Origin: Obrimoposthia wandeli
Lineage: Eukaryota
Direction of reading: 5' to 3'
NCBI GenBank assembly: GCA_977020255.1
Contig: CDROCS010002105.1
Location: 186,001-250,000, forward strand
Length of the DNA: 64,000 bases
In this document: positions 580-25,659 of the stretch, in pieces
Numbering within the stretch: the first letter of the stretch is position 1
Layout: each line of letters begins with the position of its first letter
Notes under the pieces: model-generated
Database searches by the model: none
What the model was told of the DNA's origin: nothing
The model's input: only the letters and a program-made list of their open reading frames with translations
Position numbers and translations under genes: made by a program

Positions 580-2478
580 TTAATCGTTTGAAGTAGCAAG
601 TTTGCTACTTTGAGATCGCATATTAAGCAACACAATGGCGGCGATAATTACAACACCGACTATACGTATCCAGCTATCTGTAAAAATAATCCCACCGGCT
701 AACACGAATAAAATACCCCGTTCTATCAATGATAGTGGATTAATGAGGCGTCCTTCAATACTGCCAGCAAAGGCTAAAATTAGCCCGATAGTGGTTATAA
801 TGGCAAAGACAAATCCAGACATGTTATCACTGCTGTAAATGAGCCCCGAAAAAGCCATCATGGTTGGAATGAGGAAGAAACCTTGTGCGAGCTTAAAGGC
901 TTGAACCGCTGATTTCATTGGGGAAGCATTGGCGATACCGGCCCCCGCAAACGCTGCGAGAGCGATAGGGGGAGTAACATTTGATGTTTGTGATAACCAA
1001 AAAACAATCATATGAGCGGTAAGTAAACCCAAACCAAGAGCAGTTAAGGCAGGTACGGCCATTATGGATAATACGATGTACGCGGCTGTTACAGGTAACC
1101 CCATACCAAGAATAACGGCAGCGATGGCTATCAAGCCTAAAACAGACCATAAATGACCGCCAGAAAGAGCAATCAAAAATTGGGTGAACTGCAAACCAAT
1201 ACCCGTTTGGCCAACCACACCAACAACAATACCAGCCGTTGCACATGCAACCGAAATAGGCAGTGCTAAAAGAGCGCCTTCTTTCATGCCCTGTAAGAAA
1301 ACACGAAAAGTCAGTCGACTGTGTTTTCGGCACATCGCTGCGGTAAGAATAGCGGCACACCCTGCAACACCAACTAAAACAGGGGAGTAGCTCATTAACA
1401 GTAACGTCGTTATAAAAATTAACGGGACTAAAAAGTGCCAACCTTGTTTAAGTACCACACTTAATTTTTCAACGGTATCCATGCCTTGCAAACCGAGTTT
1501 ACACGCCATTAAATGCACATAAAGCAGTGTACAGCCAAAATATAAAATGGCAGGTGCAATCGAAACGAGCAAGATTTCACTGTATGGAATACCTGTAAAT
1601 TGTGCCATTACAAAAGCACCAGCTCCCATTACGGGTGGCATAATTTGCCCCCCGGTAGATGCTGCTGCCTCAATACCTGCTGCTTGCTCAGGTTTATATC
1701 CAAGTTTCTTCATCATCGGAATCGTCAGTGCGCCTGTGGTGACGGTGTTCGCAATGGCTGAACCAGATATTGACCCCAATGCAGCAGATGCAATGACACT
1801 TGCTTTTGCAGGTCCTCCTCGATACTTTCCTGCCACCGAAAATGCACCATCAATGAAGAACTGACCCGCACCACTGACTTGTAAAAAAGCGCCAAATAAC
1901 ACAAAAATAAAAACAACACCGGCCGCAATAGCAAGAGGGGCACCGAAAACGCCATTGGTTGAAAAAATATGAAAACGAATAATTTCTTCTACCGAGAACC
2001 CTTTACTCGCGACTACGTCAGGCAATATGTTGCCAAATAAAGCATACCCAAGAAAAAATACCGCGATAGCGACCATCACGAGCCCAACAGTTCGGCGGGT
2101 TGCCTCTAGTAGCAAAGCGATAATAATTACCCCTGCCAGTTGATCGGTACTGGTTAGCCCATCAAGCAAGAAGCCAATATCATCGTAATCAAATTGGATA
2201 ACTCGAAGTACAGCCCAAATCGTGAGGCCTGCAAAAGTAATATCAATTAAACGAGCAGGTAAATAGAGGCGAGGGTGTTTGCTTATATGAACTAGAGGCT
2301 TTACGAGAAAGACTAAAACAAGCACCCAACTAAGGTGAATCGGGCGGAAAATAGGGGCCGAAAGCTCTGCTGTAATACCTTGCCATACTTGAAATACAGA
2401 TAGAATAATCGCTGCAATTGTTGCAACGAACATGATTTTGTCTGCCAATACTTGGCGGAATGAAGAGGTTGTCGTCAT
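580..2478 (-). CDS. TRAP transporter fused 4TM/12TM permease (TAXI type)
   Basis: 632 aa polytopic; GGPAKASV, SGSAIANTVTTG, ASTGGQIMPPVMGAGAF, TPPIALAAFAGA motifs. Confidence 0.92.
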   Translation of the reverse strand: MTTTSSFRQVLADKIMFVATIAAIILSVFQVWQGITAELSAPIFRPIHLSWVLVLVFLVKPLVHISKHPRLYLPARLIDITFAGLTIWAVLRVIQFDYDDIGFLLDGLTSTDQLAGVIIIALLLEATRRTVGLVMVAIAVFFLGYALFGNILPDVVASKGFSVEEIIRFHIFSTNGVFGAPLAIAAGVVFIFVLFGAFLQVSGAGQFFIDGAFSVAGKYRGGPAKASVIASAALGSISGSAIANTVTTGALTIPMMKKLGYKPEQAAGIEAAASTGGQIMPPVMGAGAFVMAQFTGIPYSEILLVSIAPAILYFGCTLLYVHLMACKLGLQGMDTVEKLSVVLKQGWHFLVPLIFITTLLLMSYSPVLVGVAGCAAILTAAMCRKHSRLTFRVFLQGMKEGALLALPISVACATAGIVVGVVGQTGIGLQFTQFLIALSGGHLWSVLGLIAIAAVILGMGLPVTAAYIVLSIMAVPALTALGLGLLTAHMIVFWLSQTSNVTPPIALAAFAGAGIANASPMKSAVQAFKLAQGFFLIPTMMAFSGLIYSSDNMSGFVFAIITTIGLILAFAGSIEGRLINPLSLIERGILFVLAGGIIFTDSWIRIVGVVIIAAIVLLNMRSQSSKLATSND

Positions 2479-2698
2479 CGCTTACTCCGTGCAATTAAAC
2501 GAGTGAACCGAAAATGTAGAACGAATAGTCATTTTATATCCACAATAATAAGTATTTGCTCTGTGTTATTCTCATAGGATTAGTTTGTGTCTGTACTCTT
2601 TTTGTACGAATAGAGCACTTGTATCATTAACAAGTGCTCTTATTATTATCGAACGAATTACCTCTGTTCAGTTAGCTTGAACTAACCGAACGAAAGGT

Positions 2699-3628
2699 TT
2701 ATTTGGTTTGTTCGTTTAAATATTTTTGAGCACCAGGATGAAGAGGGATCCCTTTTAGTTGCCCCATATTTTCAATTGTCGTGAATTTAGTCACACCAAT
2801 CACTTGTCGAATTTTCTCGATATTATCGAAAGCGGCTTTTGTCATATCGTAAGCTAGCTCTTCGTCCATCTTGTTGTTTGCAACAAGTACGTTCCATACC
2901 GCTGGCGCTTTAAATTCAGGCACGTTTTTATATGTATCAGCTGGTACATCAAGGCTTTGGTAGGAAGGGTTAGTTTCAACGATCTTCGCTAGTTCAGCAT
3001 CAGTGAATGACAGAATACGGATATTACGTGTTAAGGCTAATTCTGTAATCGCGCCTACACCTAGGCTACCAACAATAACACCTGCATCAATCTGACCATT
3101 CGCTAATGCATTGGTTGTTGCGGTGTAGTTCAGGGCTTGGCCATTCACATCACTTTCTTCAATACCTAATGTTTTTAAAATATTAATGGCACTCACTCGT
3201 GTACCTGACCCCGGTGCGCCCAGTGATACGCGTTTGCCTTTTAGCTGCTCAATTGACGTGATGTCTGAGTCGGCAGGTACCAAGAATTGAACCACATTTG
3301 GGTAAAGGGCAAAGAGTACCGATACATCCATTTTTCGTGGGAAAGGTTTTGTTCCTTCATAGGCTTGTAAAACTACATTACCCATAGCAATACCCGCTAA
3401 CTGCTTATTGCTTGATACTTTAATAACATTTTCTACCGATGCCGCTGTTACTTCAGCACGCATGTTGAAGTCATCGATACTGTCACTCCACACTTTTGCA
3501 AGAATGCCGCCTAACGGGTAATAAGTACCGCTTTGGCTTCCAGTGCCAATAGTGTAATTTTCAGCAGCTGCAGGTAGCGAAATTGCCAATGTTAATGCAA
3601 TAAGCCCTGTTTTGAGAGATTGATACAT
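2699..3628 (-). CDS. TAXI family TRAP solute-binding protein
   Basis: Signal peptide; IGTGSQSGTYYPLGG, SVEN, LGAPGSGT, PLHPGA motifs; upstream of the fused permease. Confidence 0.92.
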   Translation of the reverse strand: MYQSLKTGLIALTLAISLPAAAENYTIGTGSQSGTYYPLGGILAKVWSDSIDDFNMRAEVTAASVENVIKVSSNKQLAGIAMGNVVLQAYEGTKPFPRKMDVSVLFALYPNVVQFLVPADSDITSIEQLKGKRVSLGAPGSGTRVSAINILKTLGIEESDVNGQALNYTATTNALANGQIDAGVIVGSLGVGAITELALTRNIRILSFTDAELAKIVETNPSYQSLDVPADTYKNVPEFKAPAVWNVLVANNKMDEELAYDMTKAAFDNIEKIRQVIGVTKFTTIENMGQLKGIPLHPGAQKYLNEQTK

Positions 3629-3910
3629 TGTGTGTAAACTCCTTTTTAAATTGAAATGTATTTATCTAGTTAGACAGCTAACCTAATATCACATAACTGC
3701 TATGTAGCGAGTATGGCAATGAAGGCGCTGAGTTTTTATACTTTAAATGTTATGGGCTTGTTATTGTAAATGGTCAATATTGAAGCTGCAGAAATGAGAC
3801 ATCATCGAAGTAGATTATTAACTAGTTGTGTTCTTTCCAGTTCAGCATATTGAAAATACGTAAAAATTTCTGTAATTCAATCTAGTGAAGAAATGGAAGA
3901 GATGAAATAG

Positions 3911-3943
3911 AAAAACAGGAAGCCAATGCGTGGGCTTCCTGTT
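3911..3943 (-). terminator. Intrinsic terminator after the 4021..4371 gene
   Basis: AACAGGAAGCC-loop-GGCTTCCTGTT, followed by a T-tract on the minus strand. Confidence 0.75.
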
Positions 3944-4020
3944 CGTGCTGGCGTTAAAGTTAGGTTAATTGCTTGATGTTATTGTTGTAGTCTTCTTCGT
4001 TGTGCTGTTTTTTATCAACA

Positions 4021-4371
4021 CTAACGACTATTTGGACCACTGACATCATAGCTATAATTTATATTGACCATTGCACGGTATTTAACTTGTCCTTTTGCTG
4101 TTGAAATTTCGTCAACCTCCACATGTGAACTTTCAACTTTTATCGAATTAGTTTCTAGCCCATATTCATAGATACCTAATGTTCTTTTTAGTTTATTAGG
4201 TGATTCATTCTGAATGTTTGAGGCAAAGTTATGACCTAAATTGTAGGCCCCTTCTTTTGAATCACTGATCCCTGCCGTTAGGTTTCGAGTTTCTGCTTTA
4301 GAGTCCCAAGAGAAGGCAAAAGTACTTGAACTGAATATCAACGCTATGAATAGTAAAGTTAACTTTTTCAT
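4021..4371 (-). CDS. Secreted protein, probably DUF3316 family
   Basis: Signal peptide ending in TFA; SK-x-x-AY-x-LG and Y-x-A-x-V-x-x-x-Y pattern recalled from Vibrio DUF3316 proteins. Confidence 0.55.
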   Translation of the reverse strand: MKKLTLLFIALIFSSSTFAFSWDSKAETRNLTAGISDSKEGAYNLGHNFASNIQNESPNKLKRTLGIYEYGLETNSIKVESSHVEVDEISTAKGQVKYRAMVNINYSYDVSGPNSR

Positions 4372-21119: not shown

Positions 21120-21587
21120 TTATGGTTGTACTACAGGCGTTTGGTACGCCTTAGTTCCCCACAAAGGCACAGTAGATAGGCTGTGTTTAAAGCTACCCTC
21201 AGTTTCTTTGGTCGTATAAGACAAATAGAGCAAAGTTTGATTATCAGCATCGTAGATACGTCTAACCTTCATCGTTTTGAAGAAAATACTTTTAGATTTC
21301 TTAAACACGACTTCCCCAGATTTACTCTTGTCGATAGTTGCGATCATCTCTGGTGTTATATCACCTGTTTGACGGCAAGAAATCGAGCTATCACTTGGAT
21401 CAGAAAGGCTTAAATTGGCTTCAACTGATGCGATGTGACAGGTTACACCTGAAATTTTATCGTCATCCAAATTCGATATCTTTATATCTTTCATGGTGAA
21501 CATCCCCAAGGATACATCACCAACTTCATTGTCAGAACAACCAACGAGTAGGGTAGCCAGACCAATTGCGAAGAGGATCTTCTTCAT
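21120..21587 (-). CDS. creA: CreA family protein (lipoprotein signal LVGC)
   Basis: GVTCHI, SSISCRQTG, VFKKSKSIFFK, RIYD, LLYLSY, SLSTVP motifs. Confidence 0.8.
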   Translation of the reverse strand: MKKILFAIGLATLLVGCSDNEVGDVSLGMFTMKDIKISNLDDDKISGVTCHIASVEANLSLSDPSDSSISCRQTGDITPEMIATIDKSKSGEVVFKKSKSIFFKTMKVRRIYDADNQTLLYLSYTTKETEGSFKHSLSTVPLWGTKAYQTPVVQP

Positions 21588-21680: not shown

Positions 21681-22580
21681 TTAACGTTGCTGCTGGCGAT
21701 ACTTAGCAGGGGTTATCGAAAAAAACGTTTTAAAGTGTAGTGTGAAATGGGGCTGCGAAGAAAAGCCACATTGTATGGCGATATCAGCCAGAGGTTGCTG
21801 GGTTGTCTTTAATAACATTGCGGCGAGCTGTGTGCGCAGTTTGAGTACATATTGATGAGGGGGAGCTCCGAATGACTGGTGAAACATACGAGAAAAGTGA
21901 AATTCACTTAATTCAGCTATATTCGCCAGTTGCTCAATAGTAATCTTTGAATCTAAGTGGTCATGAATATATTCATTGATTCGCTTTGCGACAATGGGTG
22001 ACAAGCCACCTGTAATATTGGGTATATTAAATTGAACATTACAGTGATTTTTTAATAAATGTACGTAAATAATTTGCTGAATATGCGTAAAAGCAAGAGC
22101 GTCTGAACGATCATGCCAATTCAGTGGTAATAAGGTGTGATGGATTATATTGCTTAAGTAGCTGTCATCCACAAATGTTTGATCCATTAATTCAATATTC
22201 CGGCCTTCTTTATCGAATGCTTTTTCAAATGTGCTTTGCAGATGGTTATGCCCAAAATAAAGATGTAAGAACGTAAAGCGAGAGCTAAATCGCCACTGAG
22301 ATTGATGCTCTGCAGGCATTAAACAAAGCTTATCAGGGGCACCATATAAAGGTTTTGCTTGATTGTATAATCGATGGGTTTTTTCGCCACCATCAAGATA
22401 AAAACTTAACGTGTGGTGGTCGGGTTTACAGTAATTCGCCTGGCCATTTTCATTGCTCCATATAGCAGCCCCACTGCCATTGGGTAACCATAATTGGTTA
22501 TGCAGGGTAGCGGTGTTGTTTTGTAATGCATTGAAAATAGTGTTATTTTCTGTATTATTACGATCGATTTTTTCTATCAA
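21681..22580 (-). CDS. AraC family transcriptional regulator
   Basis: C-terminal double HTH (LSEFHFSRMFHQSFG, IAIQCGFSSQPHFT). Confidence 0.92.
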   Translation of the reverse strand: MIEKIDRNNTENNTIFNALQNNTATLHNQLWLPNGSGAAIWSNENGQANYCKPDHHTLSFYLDGGEKTHRLYNQAKPLYGAPDKLCLMPAEHQSQWRFSSRFTFLHLYFGHNHLQSTFEKAFDKEGRNIELMDQTFVDDSYLSNIIHHTLLPLNWHDRSDALAFTHIQQIIYVHLLKNHCNVQFNIPNITGGLSPIVAKRINEYIHDHLDSKITIEQLANIAELSEFHFSRMFHQSFGAPPHQYVLKLRTQLAAMLLKTTQQPLADIAIQCGFSSQPHFTLHFKTFFSITPAKYRQQQR

Positions 22581-22772
22581 TGCAACACCTTAATGTCGTG
22601 ATAATCAGTAATTGCGAGGTGTAATGATACAATTTTTTAACAACTTTTATATATTATGTCTGAATTAACCGCAAGAACATATAATTCCCCGCAGTAACCT
22701 GTAATTCATTTTTTCCTTAGCTGTGTATCTTGATTCTGTCGTTGTTGTCACGATGTTATTGAAAAGGAATAA

Positions 22773-23699
22773 ATGATGAATTTGATACTGTATTTTTCAA
22801 CGGTGTTAATTTGGGGCACTACGTGGTTAGCCATTGCCTTTCAAATAGGGGATGCCCCCGTTACTTTGTCTGTAAGCTATCGGTTTGGATTAGCAGCCGC
22901 AGTCTTGATGTTGTTATTAGTATTAAAAGGCGTATCACTTAAAATTTCTAAGAAAAATCATTTGTTTGCCTTATCGCTCGGTGGCTTTTTATTTTCGACG
23001 AACTTTATCTGTTTTTATTATGCGACCTATTATATTCCTAGTGGCCTTAATGCGGTTATCTTCTCGCTCGCACCATTGTTGAATGCATTAAATGGTTGGC
23101 TTTTTTTACGCAATACACCTGATAAACGTGTAATTCAAGGCGGTATTATTGGTGTTATTGGTGTCTTGTTATTATTTCTGCCACAAATATTATCAACGGA
23201 AACCAATCAACTGGCGATTTTGGGGTTATTTCTTTCTCTTGCTGGCACTTACTGCTTTTCATGTGGAAATTTTATTTCATCTAAAGCACAGTCACTGCAC
23301 ATGCCTTTGTTACCGACAACGGCTTGGGGGATGGCATATGGCAGTGGATTTTTATTAATACTTACCGTTACGATGGGCAATGAAATTTTACTGCCAATGG
23401 ATAAAGATTACTTATTATCATTGTTATACCTTGCCATTTTTGGTTCTGTAATCGGCTTTAATACGTACTTATTACTGGTGGGGCGAATTGGTCCACAAAA
23501 AGCAGCCTACTGCACCGTGTTGTTTCCTATCATCGCGTTATTACTATCTACTTGGTTTGAAGGCTACAAGTGGGAGTGGCCTGCAGTACTGGGTGTTGTT
23601 ATGGTGATTATGGGTAATTTTCGTGTGTTTGGTATCGATAGCCAATGGTTGAATCGATACCGCCTTTTCAGGCAACGTTTAGTGGATACATCAAGTTAA
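22773..23699 (+). CDS. EamA/DMT family 10-TM transporter
   Basis: LIWGTTW start, duplicated EamA halves, GSVIGFNTY; divergent from AraC. Confidence 0.9.
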   Translation: MMNLILYFSTVLIWGTTWLAIAFQIGDAPVTLSVSYRFGLAAAVLMLLLVLKGVSLKISKKNHLFALSLGGFLFSTNFICFYYATYYIPSGLNAVIFSLAPLLNALNGWLFLRNTPDKRVIQGGIIGVIGVLLLFLPQILSTETNQLAILGLFLSLAGTYCFSCGNFISSKAQSLHMPLLPTTAWGMAYGSGFLLILTVTMGNEILLPMDKDYLLSLLYLAIFGSVIGFNTYLLLVGRIGPQKAAYCTVLFPIIALLLSTWFEGYKWEWPAVLGVVMVIMGNFRVFGIDSQWLNRYRLFRQRLVDTSS

Positions 23700-23725
23700 A
23701 AAAAAGCCGACTTAAGAAAGTCGGC
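23698..23725 (-). terminator. Orphan minus-strand intrinsic terminator
   Basis: Minus strand reads GCCGACUU-UCUU-AAGUCGGC-U8; no U-tract follows the hairpin on the plus strand. Confidence 0.8.
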
Positions 23726-23800
23726 AAGAGACGCAGTAAGGAGTACATATGCCATTGATAGCGAAGTTTACATATGCTTACGTCATGTAATTTACTTAAC
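23698..23800 (-). ncRNA. Candidate Hfq-type small RNA (5' end uncertain)
   Basis: Strong terminator with no minus-strand CDS within ~850 bp; unpaired anti-SD ACUCCUUA upstream of it; 5' stem extended by G-U pairs only on this strand. Confidence 0.5.
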
Positions 23801-24094
23801 AAACATTATTACGTGCCAAACCGTCAATATGATCACTCTAGTGTTTGAAATATTAAATTTTTAAACATTACATAATCTTTTTTTATGTAACATTTTGAAA
23901 TAAAGGGTTATTTTAACAATTTTTCACGTGAATAATTATTCTCTTCTTCGTCAATAAGGTATTTTTTTTAAGAAAATGGTAATTTGAACTTTTATTTAAC
24001 AATAAATACACATAGGATAAAGAGTACTTAAATTTAGTTAGGAGGAGTGTTTTAGGGGGAGAATCTTTACACATAAAAAATTCTGGAGGATAAG

Positions 24095-24424
24095 ATGTCG
24101 AATATCATAGCTTTTCCAGTAAAAGAGCAGCCAAAAGAATTGTCACCACTAGAAGTAGTTGTTGAACAGGAACTACTCGATATTGGTGCAGACCCAATGA
24201 TGGCGAGAGTAATAGTAGAGCGGATGGAAAAGTTCTTAGTATTAGCCTCATTTGAGTTTGATATGACCATGTCGGTGTCGAAAGAATGTGTAGATGAAAT
24301 GCGTGAATCTGTATTTCCAGCCATTACAAAAATGGAGACCAATATTAAAGATGCAATGAGTGAATTAATGACAGAAAGAGTGTTGCACGAAATTCAGTTG
24401 TATCGACTTGAGCAACAAGCCTAA
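24095..24424 (+). CDS. Hypothetical protein (acidic, helical)
   Basis: 109 aa; GGAGG RBS; own terminator at 24505. Confidence 0.75.
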   Translation: MSNIIAFPVKEQPKELSPLEVVVEQELLDIGADPMMARVIVERMEKFLVLASFEFDMTMSVSKECVDEMRESVFPAITKMETNIKDAMSELMTERVLHEIQLYRLEQQA

Positions 24425-24504
24425 TCAACCAGCGTCATGTATTCGAAGTTAGTAATACGATCCGCAGTTAAACAGACAAAATATATGAATAGTTCAATTT
24501 GAAT

Positions 24505-24530
24505 GCCGCTGCCGTTATGCAGCGGTTTTT
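24505..24530 (+). terminator. Intrinsic terminator
   Basis: CCGCTGC-CGTTAT-GCAGCGG-TTTTT. Confidence 0.75.
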
Positions 24531-24585
24531 CGTTCAAATATATTATGTTTTGACTATGAAAGTACTTCTTGATGTTTAAAAGTAC

Positions 24586-25659
24586 TTATTGATGTTTTAT
24601 AGGGGGTGGTTCGTCGCCAGTAGGATTCTCGCCTATTTGCCATAACTTCTCAGCTTTAGAGCCTATAGCCCAAAAGCTAAGCGCCAGCACAGCAAAGAAT
24701 ATTGTTTTATGCGACGATTCCCAAAAGTACTCAAAGTAACGAGTATAAAAATTAATCAATAGAAAGGTGATACCAAAACTACGACTTAATGTGTCATTGA
24801 ACTTAATGCCGACATAAATTGCTATAAAACAAACAGTAATAGCCAATATAGACCAATGGATCAATTCAATTTGCTTAACATTTGACCAGGCTGCTATATC
24901 ACCATAGTTACCAAAAATAGAAAGCAGCCATAGCGATATAAATAAATACAACAGCCCAACAAATCGGGTCGGTTCTTGTAAGCGCTCATACTTTGGATAT
25001 TTAGGGAATAATAGACTTAATGCAGTAATAGCAGCGCCAACAAAAACAAAGCGTAGAGGGTGGTTCATACCTAAAAAGTAGGCATCCCAATCAGATAAGA
25101 AGCTTGTTTCTGTTAACACCCAAACACCAAAAGTGAACAGTGCAAATAGCCAGATCAATATCGATGATAGCCGTAATCCAAGAACAGCATAAATGGCAGT
25201 TAGCAGTAAAAGCAGTGGGGCTTCATGCGTATCGCCATATAACGATGTAGCCCCAAAAAAGCCAACAGAGACTGCCGTCATTACAACACCAAAGAAGAAT
25301 GTCGCTTCATTACTGATATTTTTCGTTGGATATTTACGTCGACGGTGAATACCTACGGCATATAACCCAGCGGCAATTACCGCGGTTAATATAGAAAGCA
25401 CGCCAGCAGGGGCATCAAAGATTTTGGCGAGTAAATCGAGTAAGTAATCGTCTGCAAGTAATACACCCAACGAGATAACGAAGCATGTAATCGCAATCCA
25501 GAATGAATATACAGCCAATAACTTCCAATCAAAGCCGACAATCTGCATGCTTTGTCTTAATGTATTGGCTTGATCTGTACTGATCGTGAGTTTTTCTTCC
25601 CAAGAATCAATCGCATTGTTTAGTACTTGCGCTTTCTTTTTACTTACTTTCATTATCAC
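24586..25659 (-). CDS. DUF2157-like polytopic membrane protein
   Basis: N-terminal 'AIDSWEEKLTISTDQANTL' amphipathic segment followed by ~11 TM helices. Confidence 0.65.
   Translation of the reverse strand: MIMKVSKKKAQVLNNAIDSWEEKLTISTDQANTLRQSMQIVGFDWKLLAVYSFWIAITCFVISLGVLLADDYLLDLLAKIFDAPAGVLSILTAVIAAGLYAVGIHRRRKYPTKNISNEATFFFGVVMTAVSVGFFGATSLYGDTHEAPLLLLLTAIYAVLGLRLSSILIWLFALFTFGVWVLTETSFLSDWDAYFLGMNHPLRFVFVGAAITALSLLFPKYPKYERLQEPTRFVGLLYLFISLWLLSIFGNYGDIAAWSNVKQIELIHWSILAITVCFIAIYVGIKFNDTLSRSFGITFLLINFYTRYFEYFWESSHKTIFFAVLALSFWAIGSKAEKLWQIGENPTGDEPPPIKHQ

What the first reader, a model, noticed from the sequence alone, without database searches (positions are those of the whole stretch)
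23698..23830. Orphan terminator reveals a probable unannotated sRNA with an anti-Shine-Dalgarno seed
Seen: an 8-bp GC stem with U8 works only on the minus strand, yet the nearest minus-strand CDS ends ~860 bp away beyond a plus-strand gene. Upstream of the stem the RNA reads ...GCAUAUGU-loop-GGCAUAUGU-ACUCCUUACUGCGUCUCUU: a CAUAUG/CAUAUG stem extended by G-U pairs on this strand only, then an exposed ACUCCUUA complementary to UAAGGAG. Known: 5' stem, single-stranded seed and Rho-independent terminator with a long U-tail is the Hfq sRNA layout; CyaR uses a similar anti-SD seed. I do not recognise it as a named Vibrio sRNA. It also abuts the 3' end of the EamA mRNA.
Basis: partly seen in the sequence, partly recalled or inferred. 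Interest (0 to 1): 0.7.

Follow-up and report, generated by a model that had tools for sequence, protein, structure and literature searches.

The report
Orphan terminator, unproven small RNA
A textbook transcription stop signal with no gene in front of it sits next to a transporter gene in a Photobacterium contig and may mark a small RNA, but the proposed ribosome-site-blocking 'seed' varies between close relatives and no transcript has been seen, so it is an ordinary, unproven candidate.

Summary
A canonical minus-strand intrinsic terminator (8-bp stem 23725-23706, U8 tail 23705-23698) has no co-directional gene for 861 nt. Its tail overlaps the stop codon of the convergent eamA gene by 2 nt. 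The organism is a Photobacterium of the P. profundum clade, not a Vibrio, on a contig inside a 1.35-Gb eukaryote assembly.

An ~88-nt unit (23784-23698) folds into an outer 6-bp stem, an inner CAUAUG hairpin and the terminator. It has no Rfam match. It occurs in 3 of 67 Photobacterium species genomes, plus strain assemblies and metagenome contigs of the same clade.

- The anti-SD motif is the most variable spot: CUCC in 3 of 13 alleles, CUCU in 6, CUUU in 2, UUUU in 2.
- Two alleles have lost the inner hairpin.
- No sigma-70 promoter is detectable.
- There is no covariation.
- The published P. profundum SS9 transcriptome called 460 sRNAs but none here, although SS9 carries a 94-96%-identical copy.
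- Marine-sediment metatranscriptome contigs leave the body almost uncovered while the DNA beside it is deeply covered.

Best reading (about 0.38): a working terminator that ends low-level minus-strand non-coding transcription at the edge of an accessory, decaying araC-eamA cassette, acting in cis. A relic is nearly as likely. Interest is low.

The parts
23698..23705 (-). U-tail of the terminator (T8 here; T6-T7 in relatives; eroded to TTGTTT in L170 and ATTTTTT in L163). It overlaps the eamA stop codon by 2 nt.
23706..23725 (-). Terminator hairpin: 8-bp stem (5 G-C) and a 4-nt loop. The stem is invariant in 13 alleles; the loop reads UCUU here and UCUC elsewhere. L171 carries a 14-nt internal duplication.
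23726..23729 (-). U/C-rich linker UCUU immediately 5' of the terminator; invariant.
23730..23735 (-). 3' arm (UGCGUC) of the outer 6-bp stem P1. It pairs with 23784-23779. One G is deleted in G002-type alleles.
23736..23744 (-). Unpaired ACUCCUUAC, the proposed anti-SD seed. Positions 23743-23740 are the most variable in the block: CUCC, CUCU, CUUU or UUUU.
23745..23777 (-). Inner hairpin made by two copies of GCAUAUGU (23777-23770 and 23752-23745) around a 17-nt loop. The copies are also direct repeats. One copy plus the loop (25-26 nt) is deleted in G001 and L170.
23779..23784 (-). 5' arm (GACGUA) of outer stem P1. This is the putative 5' end of the ~88-nt unit, inferred from the fold and from the end of the conserved block. 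It has not been mapped.
23785..23800 (-). Conserved 16 nt directly upstream (GTTAAG-y-AAAT-y-r-CAT). It holds only a weak -10-like yAAATT and no -35. The G021/L164 deletion junction lies at ACAT (23788-23785).
23831..23843 (.). CACTAGAGTGATC, which contains the inverted repeat CACT-nn-AGTG. It is nearly invariant (one G/A polymorphism) inside a hypervariable intergenic stretch. It may be a regulator site; this was not tested.
22773..23699 (+). Convergent eamA-family transporter gene (308 aa), PBPRB0519 of SS9 by position. No plus-strand intrinsic terminator follows it.
21681..22580 (-). AraC-family regulator, divergent from eamA. With eamA it forms a clade-restricted cassette inserted between creA and the 109-aa gene.
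24095..24424 (+). 109-aa gene of unknown function (PBPRB0520 of SS9), very highly expressed in sediment metatranscriptomes. Its upstream region faces the candidate.

Best explanation
The feature is a genuine Rho-independent terminator on the minus strand, with a 60-nt structured leader. Together they form an ~88-nt unit (G23784 to U23698) at the outer edge of an accessory araC-eamA cassette. The cassette is found only in the Photobacterium profundum clade.

My preferred mechanism is cis-acting. The terminator stops low-level, probably condition-dependent, minus-strand non-coding transcription that arises in the eamA / 109-aa-gene intergenic region. It does so exactly at the eamA stop codon, so the polymerase does not run antisense through eamA. 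The released short RNA would be fully complementary to any eamA read-through 3' UTR. It is not an SD-masking trans regulator.

Shown: the terminator, its orphan status, the invariant stem, the fold and the clade distribution. Inferred: that a transcript exists, where it starts, and the cis role.
For: - The hairpin plus U8 is canonical and minus-strand specific. It is one of only four orphan sites among 16 strong terminator-like sites in the window.
- The identical 20-nt hairpin plus T-run lies about 60 nt after an ORF I read as purA in a Vibrio genome (L160). By conserved chromosomal position it probably does the same in about 48 other Vibrionaceae genomes, so it is a working terminator design.
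- The stem has 0 variable columns of 16 across 13 alleles. Variable columns make up 13% of the body and 23-29% of eamA third codon positions.
- The 89-nt unit folds at z = -4.55. An outer stem GACGUA/UGCGUC is kept even in the two alleles that lost the inner hairpin.
- The conserved block runs from the terminator to about 23800 and then gives way to a hypervariable stretch (pi 0.16-0.22).
- eamA has no plus-strand terminator of its own, so convergent overlap of transcripts is plausible.
- A different orphan terminator occupies the same relative position and orientation, divergent from the 109-aa gene, in another Photobacterium clade.
Against: - No sigma-70-like promoter was found on the minus strand between 23700 and 24100 in the window, or in the G002-type allele. 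The TGGCAC motif is not conserved, which argues against sigma-54.
- The SS9 transcriptome (PMC3505737) lists no sRNA between PBPRB0507a and PBPRB0526a. 'PBPRB0519' does not occur in any held supplementary table.
- In metatranscriptome run X17 nothing is laid on 23686-23773, while 23774-24359 sits at depth about 106.
- Diversity of the 60-nt body (pi 0.046) equals that of linked eamA third positions in the last 300 nt (0.046). Constraint on the body is therefore not demonstrated.
- Several alleles carry indels: a 25-26-nt deletion, a 14-nt duplication and 1-nt deletions. Two have eroded U-tails.
- The whole cassette is decaying or deleted in several strains.
- There is no covariation.
Confidence: 0.38

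Rival explanations
1. Relic or hitch-hiker. The hairpin and the 60 nt before it are leftover DNA carried in with, or trapped beside, the horizontally acquired araC-eamA cassette, for example the 3' end of a lost convergent gene. Nothing is transcribed into it and it has no function.
For: - No promoter is detectable and no transcript was called in SS9.
- Body diversity equals the linked synonymous diversity.
- Alleles show frequent indels and U-tail erosion.
- The cassette is restricted to 3 of 67 species genomes, plus a deletion derivative in G021.
- araC is frameshifted in SS9 and split in L163. The cassette, including this block, is deleted in G021/L164 and L166.
Against: - The stem is invariant in 13 alleles, although the sequences are too close for this to be strong (P about 0.004-0.1 depending on the neutral rate chosen).
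- The outer stem is retained in the deletion alleles.
- No remnant ORF or homology to any gene was found upstream of the hairpin. BLAST across the genus and family returned only the same locus.
Confidence: 0.3
2. An Hfq-dependent trans-acting sRNA uses the exposed ACUCCUUA to pair with Shine-Dalgarno sequences (UAAGGAG) and block translation, as CyaR does.
For: - The layout fits: a 5' stem, an unpaired pyrimidine stretch, a U/C-rich linker, and a terminator with a U6-U8 tail.
- ACUCCUUA is unpaired in the minimum-free-energy fold of the window allele.
Against: - The seed is the least conserved part of the block: CUCC in 3 of 13 alleles, CUCU in 6, CUUU in 2, UUUU in 2.
- The RBS of eamA and of the 109-aa gene does not change along with the seed.
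- No Rfam family, CyaR included, reaches threshold. The best hit is RprA at 25.5 bits against a gathering score of 70.
- There is no promoter and no transcript in SS9.
Confidence: 0.07
3. The signal belongs to the plus strand. The conserved block would hold a distal promoter or the 5' end of a long leader of the 109-aa gene. Alternatively, TAAGGAG-N5-ATG would be the ribosome site of a small plus-strand ORF. In either case the hairpin would merely cap the eamA 3' end.
For: - The X17 RNA contig starts at 23774 and runs into the 109-aa gene at depth about 106. eamA contigs are at depth 3-6 and the body is uncovered.
- G002-type alleles carry a promoter-like ATGACA-N18-TATGCT on the plus strand, with a predicted start near 23785.
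- On the plus strand the window reads TAAGGAG, 5 nt, then ATG.
- The plus-strand hairpin loop is GAGA, a GNRA tetraloop, in most alleles.
Against: - SS9 RNA-seq gives the 109-aa gene a 5' UTR of only 67 nt.
- The promoter-like match occurs at chance frequency: 3 found against 2.7 expected. It is weaker in the window allele and is destroyed in the deletion alleles.
- By my reading of the alignment, the small ORF changes frame and length between alleles (13, 16 or 32 aa). Its SD decays to AAAAAG or AAAAAA.
- Contigs carry no strand, and the contig end may be an assembly break at the CATATG repeat polymorphism.
Confidence: 0.12
4. Read-through terminator. Transcripts of the 357-aa minus-strand gene (24586-25659) are not stopped after their own stop codon. 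They run antisense through the 109-aa gene and end at this hairpin.
For: - No canonical minus-strand terminator lies between 24586 and 23725. The hairpin at 24526-24505 has a proper U-run only on the plus strand; on the minus strand it is followed by AUUCAAAUU.
Against: - About 860 nt of untranslated RNA would be an easy Rho substrate (general knowledge, not tested here).
- Such a transcript would run head-on into a very highly transcribed gene.
- The X17 contigs leave 23686-23773 uncovered, so no abundant minus-strand RNA reaches the hairpin in that sample.
Confidence: 0.06

Closest known systems
CyaR (Rfam RF00112) and other enterobacterial Hfq-dependent sRNAs with C/U-rich anti-SD seeds
   Same: Size class of about 85-90 nt, a 5' stem-loop, an unpaired pyrimidine stretch, and a Rho-independent terminator with a long U-tail preceded by a U/C-rich linker.
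   Different: There is no sequence or covariance-model similarity. The candidate seed is not conserved among close relatives. No promoter (CyaR has a CRP-dependent one) and no transcript have been shown. Distribution is limited to one Photobacterium clade.
GadY-type cis-encoded sRNAs that overlap the 3' end of a convergent gene
   Same: It is encoded convergent to a protein gene and abuts its 3' end, so it would be fully complementary to any read-through 3' UTR. This is the arrangement I favour if an RNA is made.
   Different: The weak Rfam GadY hit (18.1 bits against a gathering score of 45, E = 1.2) is chance-level. Overlap with the eamA coding sequence is only 2 nt. Neither an eamA 3' UTR nor the sRNA has been demonstrated.
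Orphan-terminator sRNA candidates from predictors that pair intergenic terminators with conservation (SIPHT / sRNAPredict style)
   Same: It is defined by an intergenic, strand-specific intrinsic terminator without an upstream co-directional gene, plus conservation in relatives.
   Different: It lacks the promoter signal that raises the success rate of such predictions, and conservation does not exceed the linked synonymous rate.
The 460 putative sRNAs of P. profundum SS9 from RNA-seq (Campanaro et al. 2012, PMC3505737)
   Same: Same species group. SS9 carries this locus at 94-96% identity, on chr2 between PBPRB0519 and PBPRB0520.
   Different: This locus is not among them. The nearest intergenic calls are PBPRB0507a and PBPRB0526a.

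Membership tests
Intrinsic (Rho-independent) terminator | G+C-rich stem of 5-12 bp, a short loop, and an immediately following run of at least 6 U on the transcribed strand | tested here: met
   8-bp stem (5 G-C), 4-nt loop and U8 on the minus strand only. The identical hairpin lies about 60 nt after an ORF I read as purA in a Vibrio genome.
Intrinsic (Rho-independent) terminator | An RNA 3' end is observed at the U-tract | tested here: inconclusive
   Only unstranded contigs were available. X15 and X18 contigs run through the site, and X17 has no cover on it.
Hfq-dependent trans-acting sRNA (CyaR-like) | Own promoter and transcription start giving a discrete 50-300-nt transcript | tested here: not met
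   No sigma-70-like site on the minus strand in 23700-24100 or in the G002-type allele. The sigma-54-like TGGCAC is not conserved. No sRNA was called here in the SS9 RNA-seq. Absence under two laboratory conditions is not proof of absence.
Hfq-dependent trans-acting sRNA (CyaR-like) | A single-stranded seed conserved across relatives | tested here: not met
   CUCC in 3 alleles, CUCU in 6, CUUU in 2, UUUU in 2, out of 13. It is the most variable site of the block.
Hfq-dependent trans-acting sRNA (CyaR-like) | 3' Hfq module: a U-rich stretch before the terminator hairpin plus a U-tail of at least 6-7 | tested here: met
   A UCUU linker and a U6-U8 tail in 11 of 13 alleles. The tail is eroded in L170 and L163.
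Hfq-dependent trans-acting sRNA (CyaR-like) | Physical binding to Hfq and Hfq-dependent target regulation | not testable with these tools
   Needs RIP-seq or genetics.
Any curated Rfam family (CyaR, RprA, GadY, FnrS, Vibrio sRNAs) | Covariance-model score at or above the family's gathering threshold | tested here: not met
   No hit at gathering thresholds in the whole window. The best sub-threshold hit is RprA at 25.5 bits against 70; it is driven by the terminator.
Structured RNA under selection | Compensatory base changes that maintain helices | tested here: inconclusive
   0 of 14 consensus pairs show double changes. The sequences are at least 92% identical, so the test has no power.
cis-antisense RNA to eamA | Overlap with a transcribed part of the opposite-strand gene | tested here: inconclusive
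   There is a 2-nt overlap with the stop codon. eamA lacks a plus-strand terminator, so read-through is plausible, but no stranded data were available.

The most novel reading that the evidence does not exclude
The ~88-nt unit is a real, condition-specific small RNA private to the deep-sea and cold-adapted P. profundum clade. It would be transcribed from an activator-dependent promoter, with the nearly invariant CACTAGAGTGATC motif about 55 nt upstream as the activator site. It would act as a convergent antisense partner that sets the 3' end and stability of the eamA exporter mRNA. In this reading the variable pyrimidine tract is a tolerated loop rather than a seed.
Probability: 0.15. Interest if true: 0.4.

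Novelty: new member of a known kind. Interest (0 to 1): 0.22.

Why it matters
If an RNA is made here, it would add one clade-specific cis-antisense or small RNA to the poorly charted sRNA repertoire of Photobacterium. It would also be a small example of how an acquired gene cassette is insulated from neighbouring transcription.

As it stands, the main value is negative. A striking-looking anti-Shine-Dalgarno 'seed' next to an orphan terminator turned out to be the least conserved part of the element. This shows that seed conservation across near relatives should be checked before such candidates are promoted.

Tried and rejected
- **Rfam.** A permissive scan of 23300-24700 and a gathering-threshold scan of the whole window gave only chance-level hits.
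- **Sigma-54 promoter.** The TGGCAC at 23818-23813 reads TAGCGC or GAGCAC in relatives, so I rejected it.
- **Sigma-70 scan.** Nothing was found on the minus strand. A hand search for sigma-E-like motifs found none.
- **Metagenome scan with the terminator pattern.** It returned 111 stretches, but only one (L094) is homologous beyond the hairpin. The pattern is a common terminator design.
- **Family-wide BLAST over 401 Vibrionaceae genomes.** Beyond the three clade genomes, 48 of the 49 hits covered only the 25-29-nt terminator. In the one locus I opened, this lay about 60 nt after an ORF I read as purA.
- **eamA homologue in Vibrio sp. Of7-15 (61% identity).** It has an overlapping convergent gene and no related element.
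- **Small plus-strand ORF behind TAAGGAG.** Frame and length are not conserved, by my reading of the alignment.
- **Small minus-strand ORFs (53 aa at 23913-24074; 44 aa at 23668-23802).** Both are low-complexity, AT-rich translations. One reads through the terminator, and indels shift its frame in relatives.
- **Co-variation of the seed with neighbouring ribosome sites.** None was found.
- **Repeat or mobile element.** The block is single-copy in its own genome and in relatives.
- **Literature search for the SS9 locus tags.** No papers were found.

Full report
**Where the window comes from.** The window lies on contig C2105 of a 1.35-Gb, 6912-contig assembly, which is a eukaryote-sized genome. 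The DNA itself is bacterial. The EamA protein next to the finding is 97% identical to that of Photobacterium frigidiphilum and 95% to that of P. profundum.

**Gene layout.**

| Coordinates | Strand | Gene |
|---|---|---|
| 21120-21587 | - | creA-like |
| 21681-22580 | - | AraC-family regulator |
| 22773-23699 | + | eamA |
| 23698-23830 | - | the finding |
| 24095-24424 | + | 109-aa gene of unknown function |
| 24505-24526 | + | plus-strand terminator |
| 24586-25659 | - | 357-aa membrane protein |

**The observation.**
The minus strand has an 8-bp stem (5 G-C pairs) with a 4-nt loop at 23725-23706 and eight U at 23705-23698. The plus strand has no U-run after the hairpin.
- The last two U of the tail overlap the eamA stop codon.
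- The nearest co-directional CDS ends 861 nt upstream, behind a plus-strand gene.
- In a scan of the whole window, 11 of 16 strong terminator-like sites lie within 80 nt of a same-strand ORF stop. This is one of four that have no ORF stop within 340 nt, and it has the best tail.
- The two CAUAUG copies pair as an 8-bp stem with terminal G-U pairs, and ACUCCUUA (23744-23737) is unpaired.
- An outer 6-bp stem (GACGUA at 23784-23779 with UGCGUC at 23735-23730) encloses both.
- The 89-nt unit folds at z = -4.55 on the minus strand and -2.63 on the plus strand.

**Known families.** No Rfam family reaches its threshold anywhere in the window. The permissive scan gives only RprA (25.5 bits against 70), FnrS and GadY at E of about 1-3. 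These alignments rest on the terminator.

**Distribution.**
- BLAST of 171 nt against 67 Photobacterium species genomes found the element in three: G040 at 93%, G002 at 84% and G001 at 78%. G021 keeps only the upstream part.
- A sample of 401 Vibrionaceae genomes added nothing homologous beyond the hairpin. Forty-eight of the 49 other hits cover just the 25-29-nt terminator.
- In the one such locus I opened, the hairpin lies about 60 nt after an ORF that I recognise as purA. The hairpin is therefore a proven-type terminator, but it carries no homology signal.
- A metagenome pattern scan yielded one true homologue, L094.
- Looking up contigs that encode the neighbouring 109-aa protein gave ten more loci from strain assemblies and metagenomes.
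- In total I compared 13 alleles that carry the element and 3 that have lost it.

**Evolutionary context.**
- In Photobacterium clades whose 109-aa protein is 60-83% identical, that gene is divergent from creA with nothing in between.
- In the profundum clade the araC-eamA pair, plus about 260 nt of non-coding DNA ending in this terminator, sits between them. It is an accessory cassette.
- The cassette is decaying. araC is frameshifted in G040 and split in L163.
- In G021/L164, and independently in L166, a deletion runs from just upstream of the candidate RNA into araC. It removes eamA and the element. The G021 junction shares a 4-nt ACAT microhomology, by my reading.

**What conservation says.**

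| Region | Variable columns | Diversity (pi) |
|---|---|---|
| Terminator stem | 0 of 16 | 0 |
| 60-nt body | 8 of 60 | 0.046 |
| eamA third positions, last 300 nt | 23% | 0.046 |
| eamA third positions, whole gene | 29% | 0.078 |
| Intergenic DNA 23786-23960 | 41-60% | 0.16-0.22 |

- The body is far better conserved than the intergenic DNA just upstream of it, but no better than the linked synonymous sites. Constraint on the body is therefore not demonstrated. Constraint on the stem is only suggestive.
- Three of the eight variable columns fall in the proposed seed. CUCC occurs in the window, SS9 and L169. CUCU occurs in six alleles, CUUU in two and UUUU in two. The bases on either side are invariant.
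- G001 and L170 have lost one CAUAUG copy plus the loop by recombination between the 9-nt direct repeats, although they keep the outer stem.
- L171 has a 14-nt duplication inside the terminator.
- L170 and L163 have eroded U-tails.
- No base pair shows a compensatory change, but the sequences are too similar for that test to have power.
- The ribosome sites of eamA and of the 109-aa gene do not change with the seed.

**Promoter.**
- The consensus scan finds no sigma-70-like site on the minus strand between 23700 and 24100, in the window or in the G002-type allele.
- The TGGCAC that could suggest sigma-54 is not conserved.
- The 16 nt directly upstream of G23784 are conserved but contain only a weak yAAATT.
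- A nearly invariant CACTAGAGTGATC, which contains an inverted repeat, lies about 55 nt upstream. It could be a regulator site, for this unit or for the 109-aa gene. This is untested.

**Transcript evidence: SS9 laboratory RNA-seq.**
- G040 is P. profundum SS9 chromosome 2. Its 109-aa ORF starts at 607,220. Table S10 of Campanaro et al. 2012 (PMC3505737) gives PBPRB0520 a 5' UTR of 607,153-607,219. The paper's PBPRB0518a (605,570-605,755) translates to the AraC N-terminus.
- That study called 460 putative sRNAs, 276 of them intergenic and some as short as 57 nt.
- Its list jumps from PBPRB0507a to PBPRB0526a, and the tag PBPRB0519 does not occur in any held supplementary file. No transcript was therefore called at a 94-96%-identical copy of the element.
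- The caveat is that only two laboratory conditions were used, and strand was undetermined for many of the calls.

**Transcript evidence: metatranscriptomes.**
- Six marine-sediment metatranscriptome runs hold part of the stretch. Laying four of them gave assembled contigs only, with no strand and no ends.
- The 109-aa gene is extremely abundant, with contig depths of 1,800-4,100 in X18.
- In X17, a contig at depth about 106 spans 23774-24359. The eamA contigs are at depth 3-6, and nothing is laid on 23686-23773, which is almost exactly the candidate RNA.
- In X15 and X18, single contigs run from inside eamA through the element into the 109-aa gene.
- The abundant RNA beside the element therefore does not extend to the terminator in X17. 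The element itself is at best rare in these libraries.
- What covers 23774-24027, and on which strand, remains open. A plus-strand promoter-like site exists in G002-type alleles, but at chance frequency.

**Verdict on mechanism.**
- The terminator is real and probably functional.
- Whether it closes a discrete ~88-nt sRNA is unproven.
- The specific anti-SD mechanism is contradicted by seed variability.
- I favour, at 0.38, a cis role: stopping minus-strand non-coding transcription at the eamA stop codon. The short RNA would then be antisense to any eamA read-through.
- A functionless relic of cassette acquisition is nearly as likely (0.30).
- If real, this is one more clade-specific member of a familiar class. 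Interest is low.

Noticed in passing
whole window (G000:C2105:186001-250000): The window is Photobacterium DNA (profundum/frigidiphilum clade) on a contig of at least 250 kb inside a 1.35-Gb, 6912-contig eukaryote-sized assembly. It is probably a bacterial contaminant or associate of the sequenced host.
   Followed up: partly
window 24095-24424 (+): A 109-aa protein with no Pfam or NCBIfam match (PBPRB0520 of SS9). It is present in 27 of 67 Photobacterium genomes and is 98-100% identical within the clade. Its ~130-nt upstream region is highly conserved (pi 0.035). Contig depths reach 1,800-4,100 in a marine-sediment metatranscriptome. It is a very highly expressed gene of unknown function.
   Followed up: partly
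L029, L031-L035, between the 109-aa homologue and creA (sequences printed): Another Photobacterium clade has a different orphan-terminator element at the same relative position and orientation. About 55 nt, starting GGAGCCTTGTAGCGCC and ending in a CCGAG/CTCGG hairpin plus T8, are invariant while the flanks diverge. A -10-like TTTGAT/TTTAAT lies just upstream. It has no Rfam match. It looks like a better sRNA candidate than the one in the finding.
   Followed up: partly
window 23800-23960: This intergenic stretch is hypervariable among close relatives (pi 0.16-0.22, with several distinct haplotypes and a 72-nt replacement at 23861-23937 in the metatranscriptome strain). That is 2-5 times the diversity at eamA third codon positions. 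Low-diversity DNA flanks it on both sides.
   Followed up: partly
window 21681-23699; L153, L163, L164, L166, L021: The araC-eamA cassette is clade-restricted and decaying. araC is frameshifted in SS9 (annotated as PBPRB0518 plus PBPRB0518a) and split in L163. The cassette is deleted in G021/L164 (ACAT microhomology junction) and, with a different junction, in L166.
   Followed up: yes
window 23774 (run X17): An RNA contig at depth about 106 ends exactly at 23774, the A of a plus-strand ATG inside the first CATATG. The next 88 nt (23686-23773) are uncovered. It may be a plus-strand RNA 5' end, or an assembly break at the CATATG repeat and deletion polymorphism. This is unresolved.
   Followed up: partly
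window 24505-24526 and 24425-24586: The terminator between the convergent 109-aa and 357-aa genes has a proper U-run only on the plus strand. The 357-aa gene (minus strand) has no canonical intrinsic terminator of its own.
   Followed up: partly
L160 1501-1529 and about 48 other Vibrionaceae genomes: The 20-nt hairpin GCCGACTTTCTTAAGTCGGC plus a T-run is identical to the terminator about 60 nt after an ORF I read as purA in a Vibrio genome. The stem with any 4-nt loop occurs in 111 metagenome stretches. It is a recurrent terminator design rather than a homology signal.
   Followed up: partly
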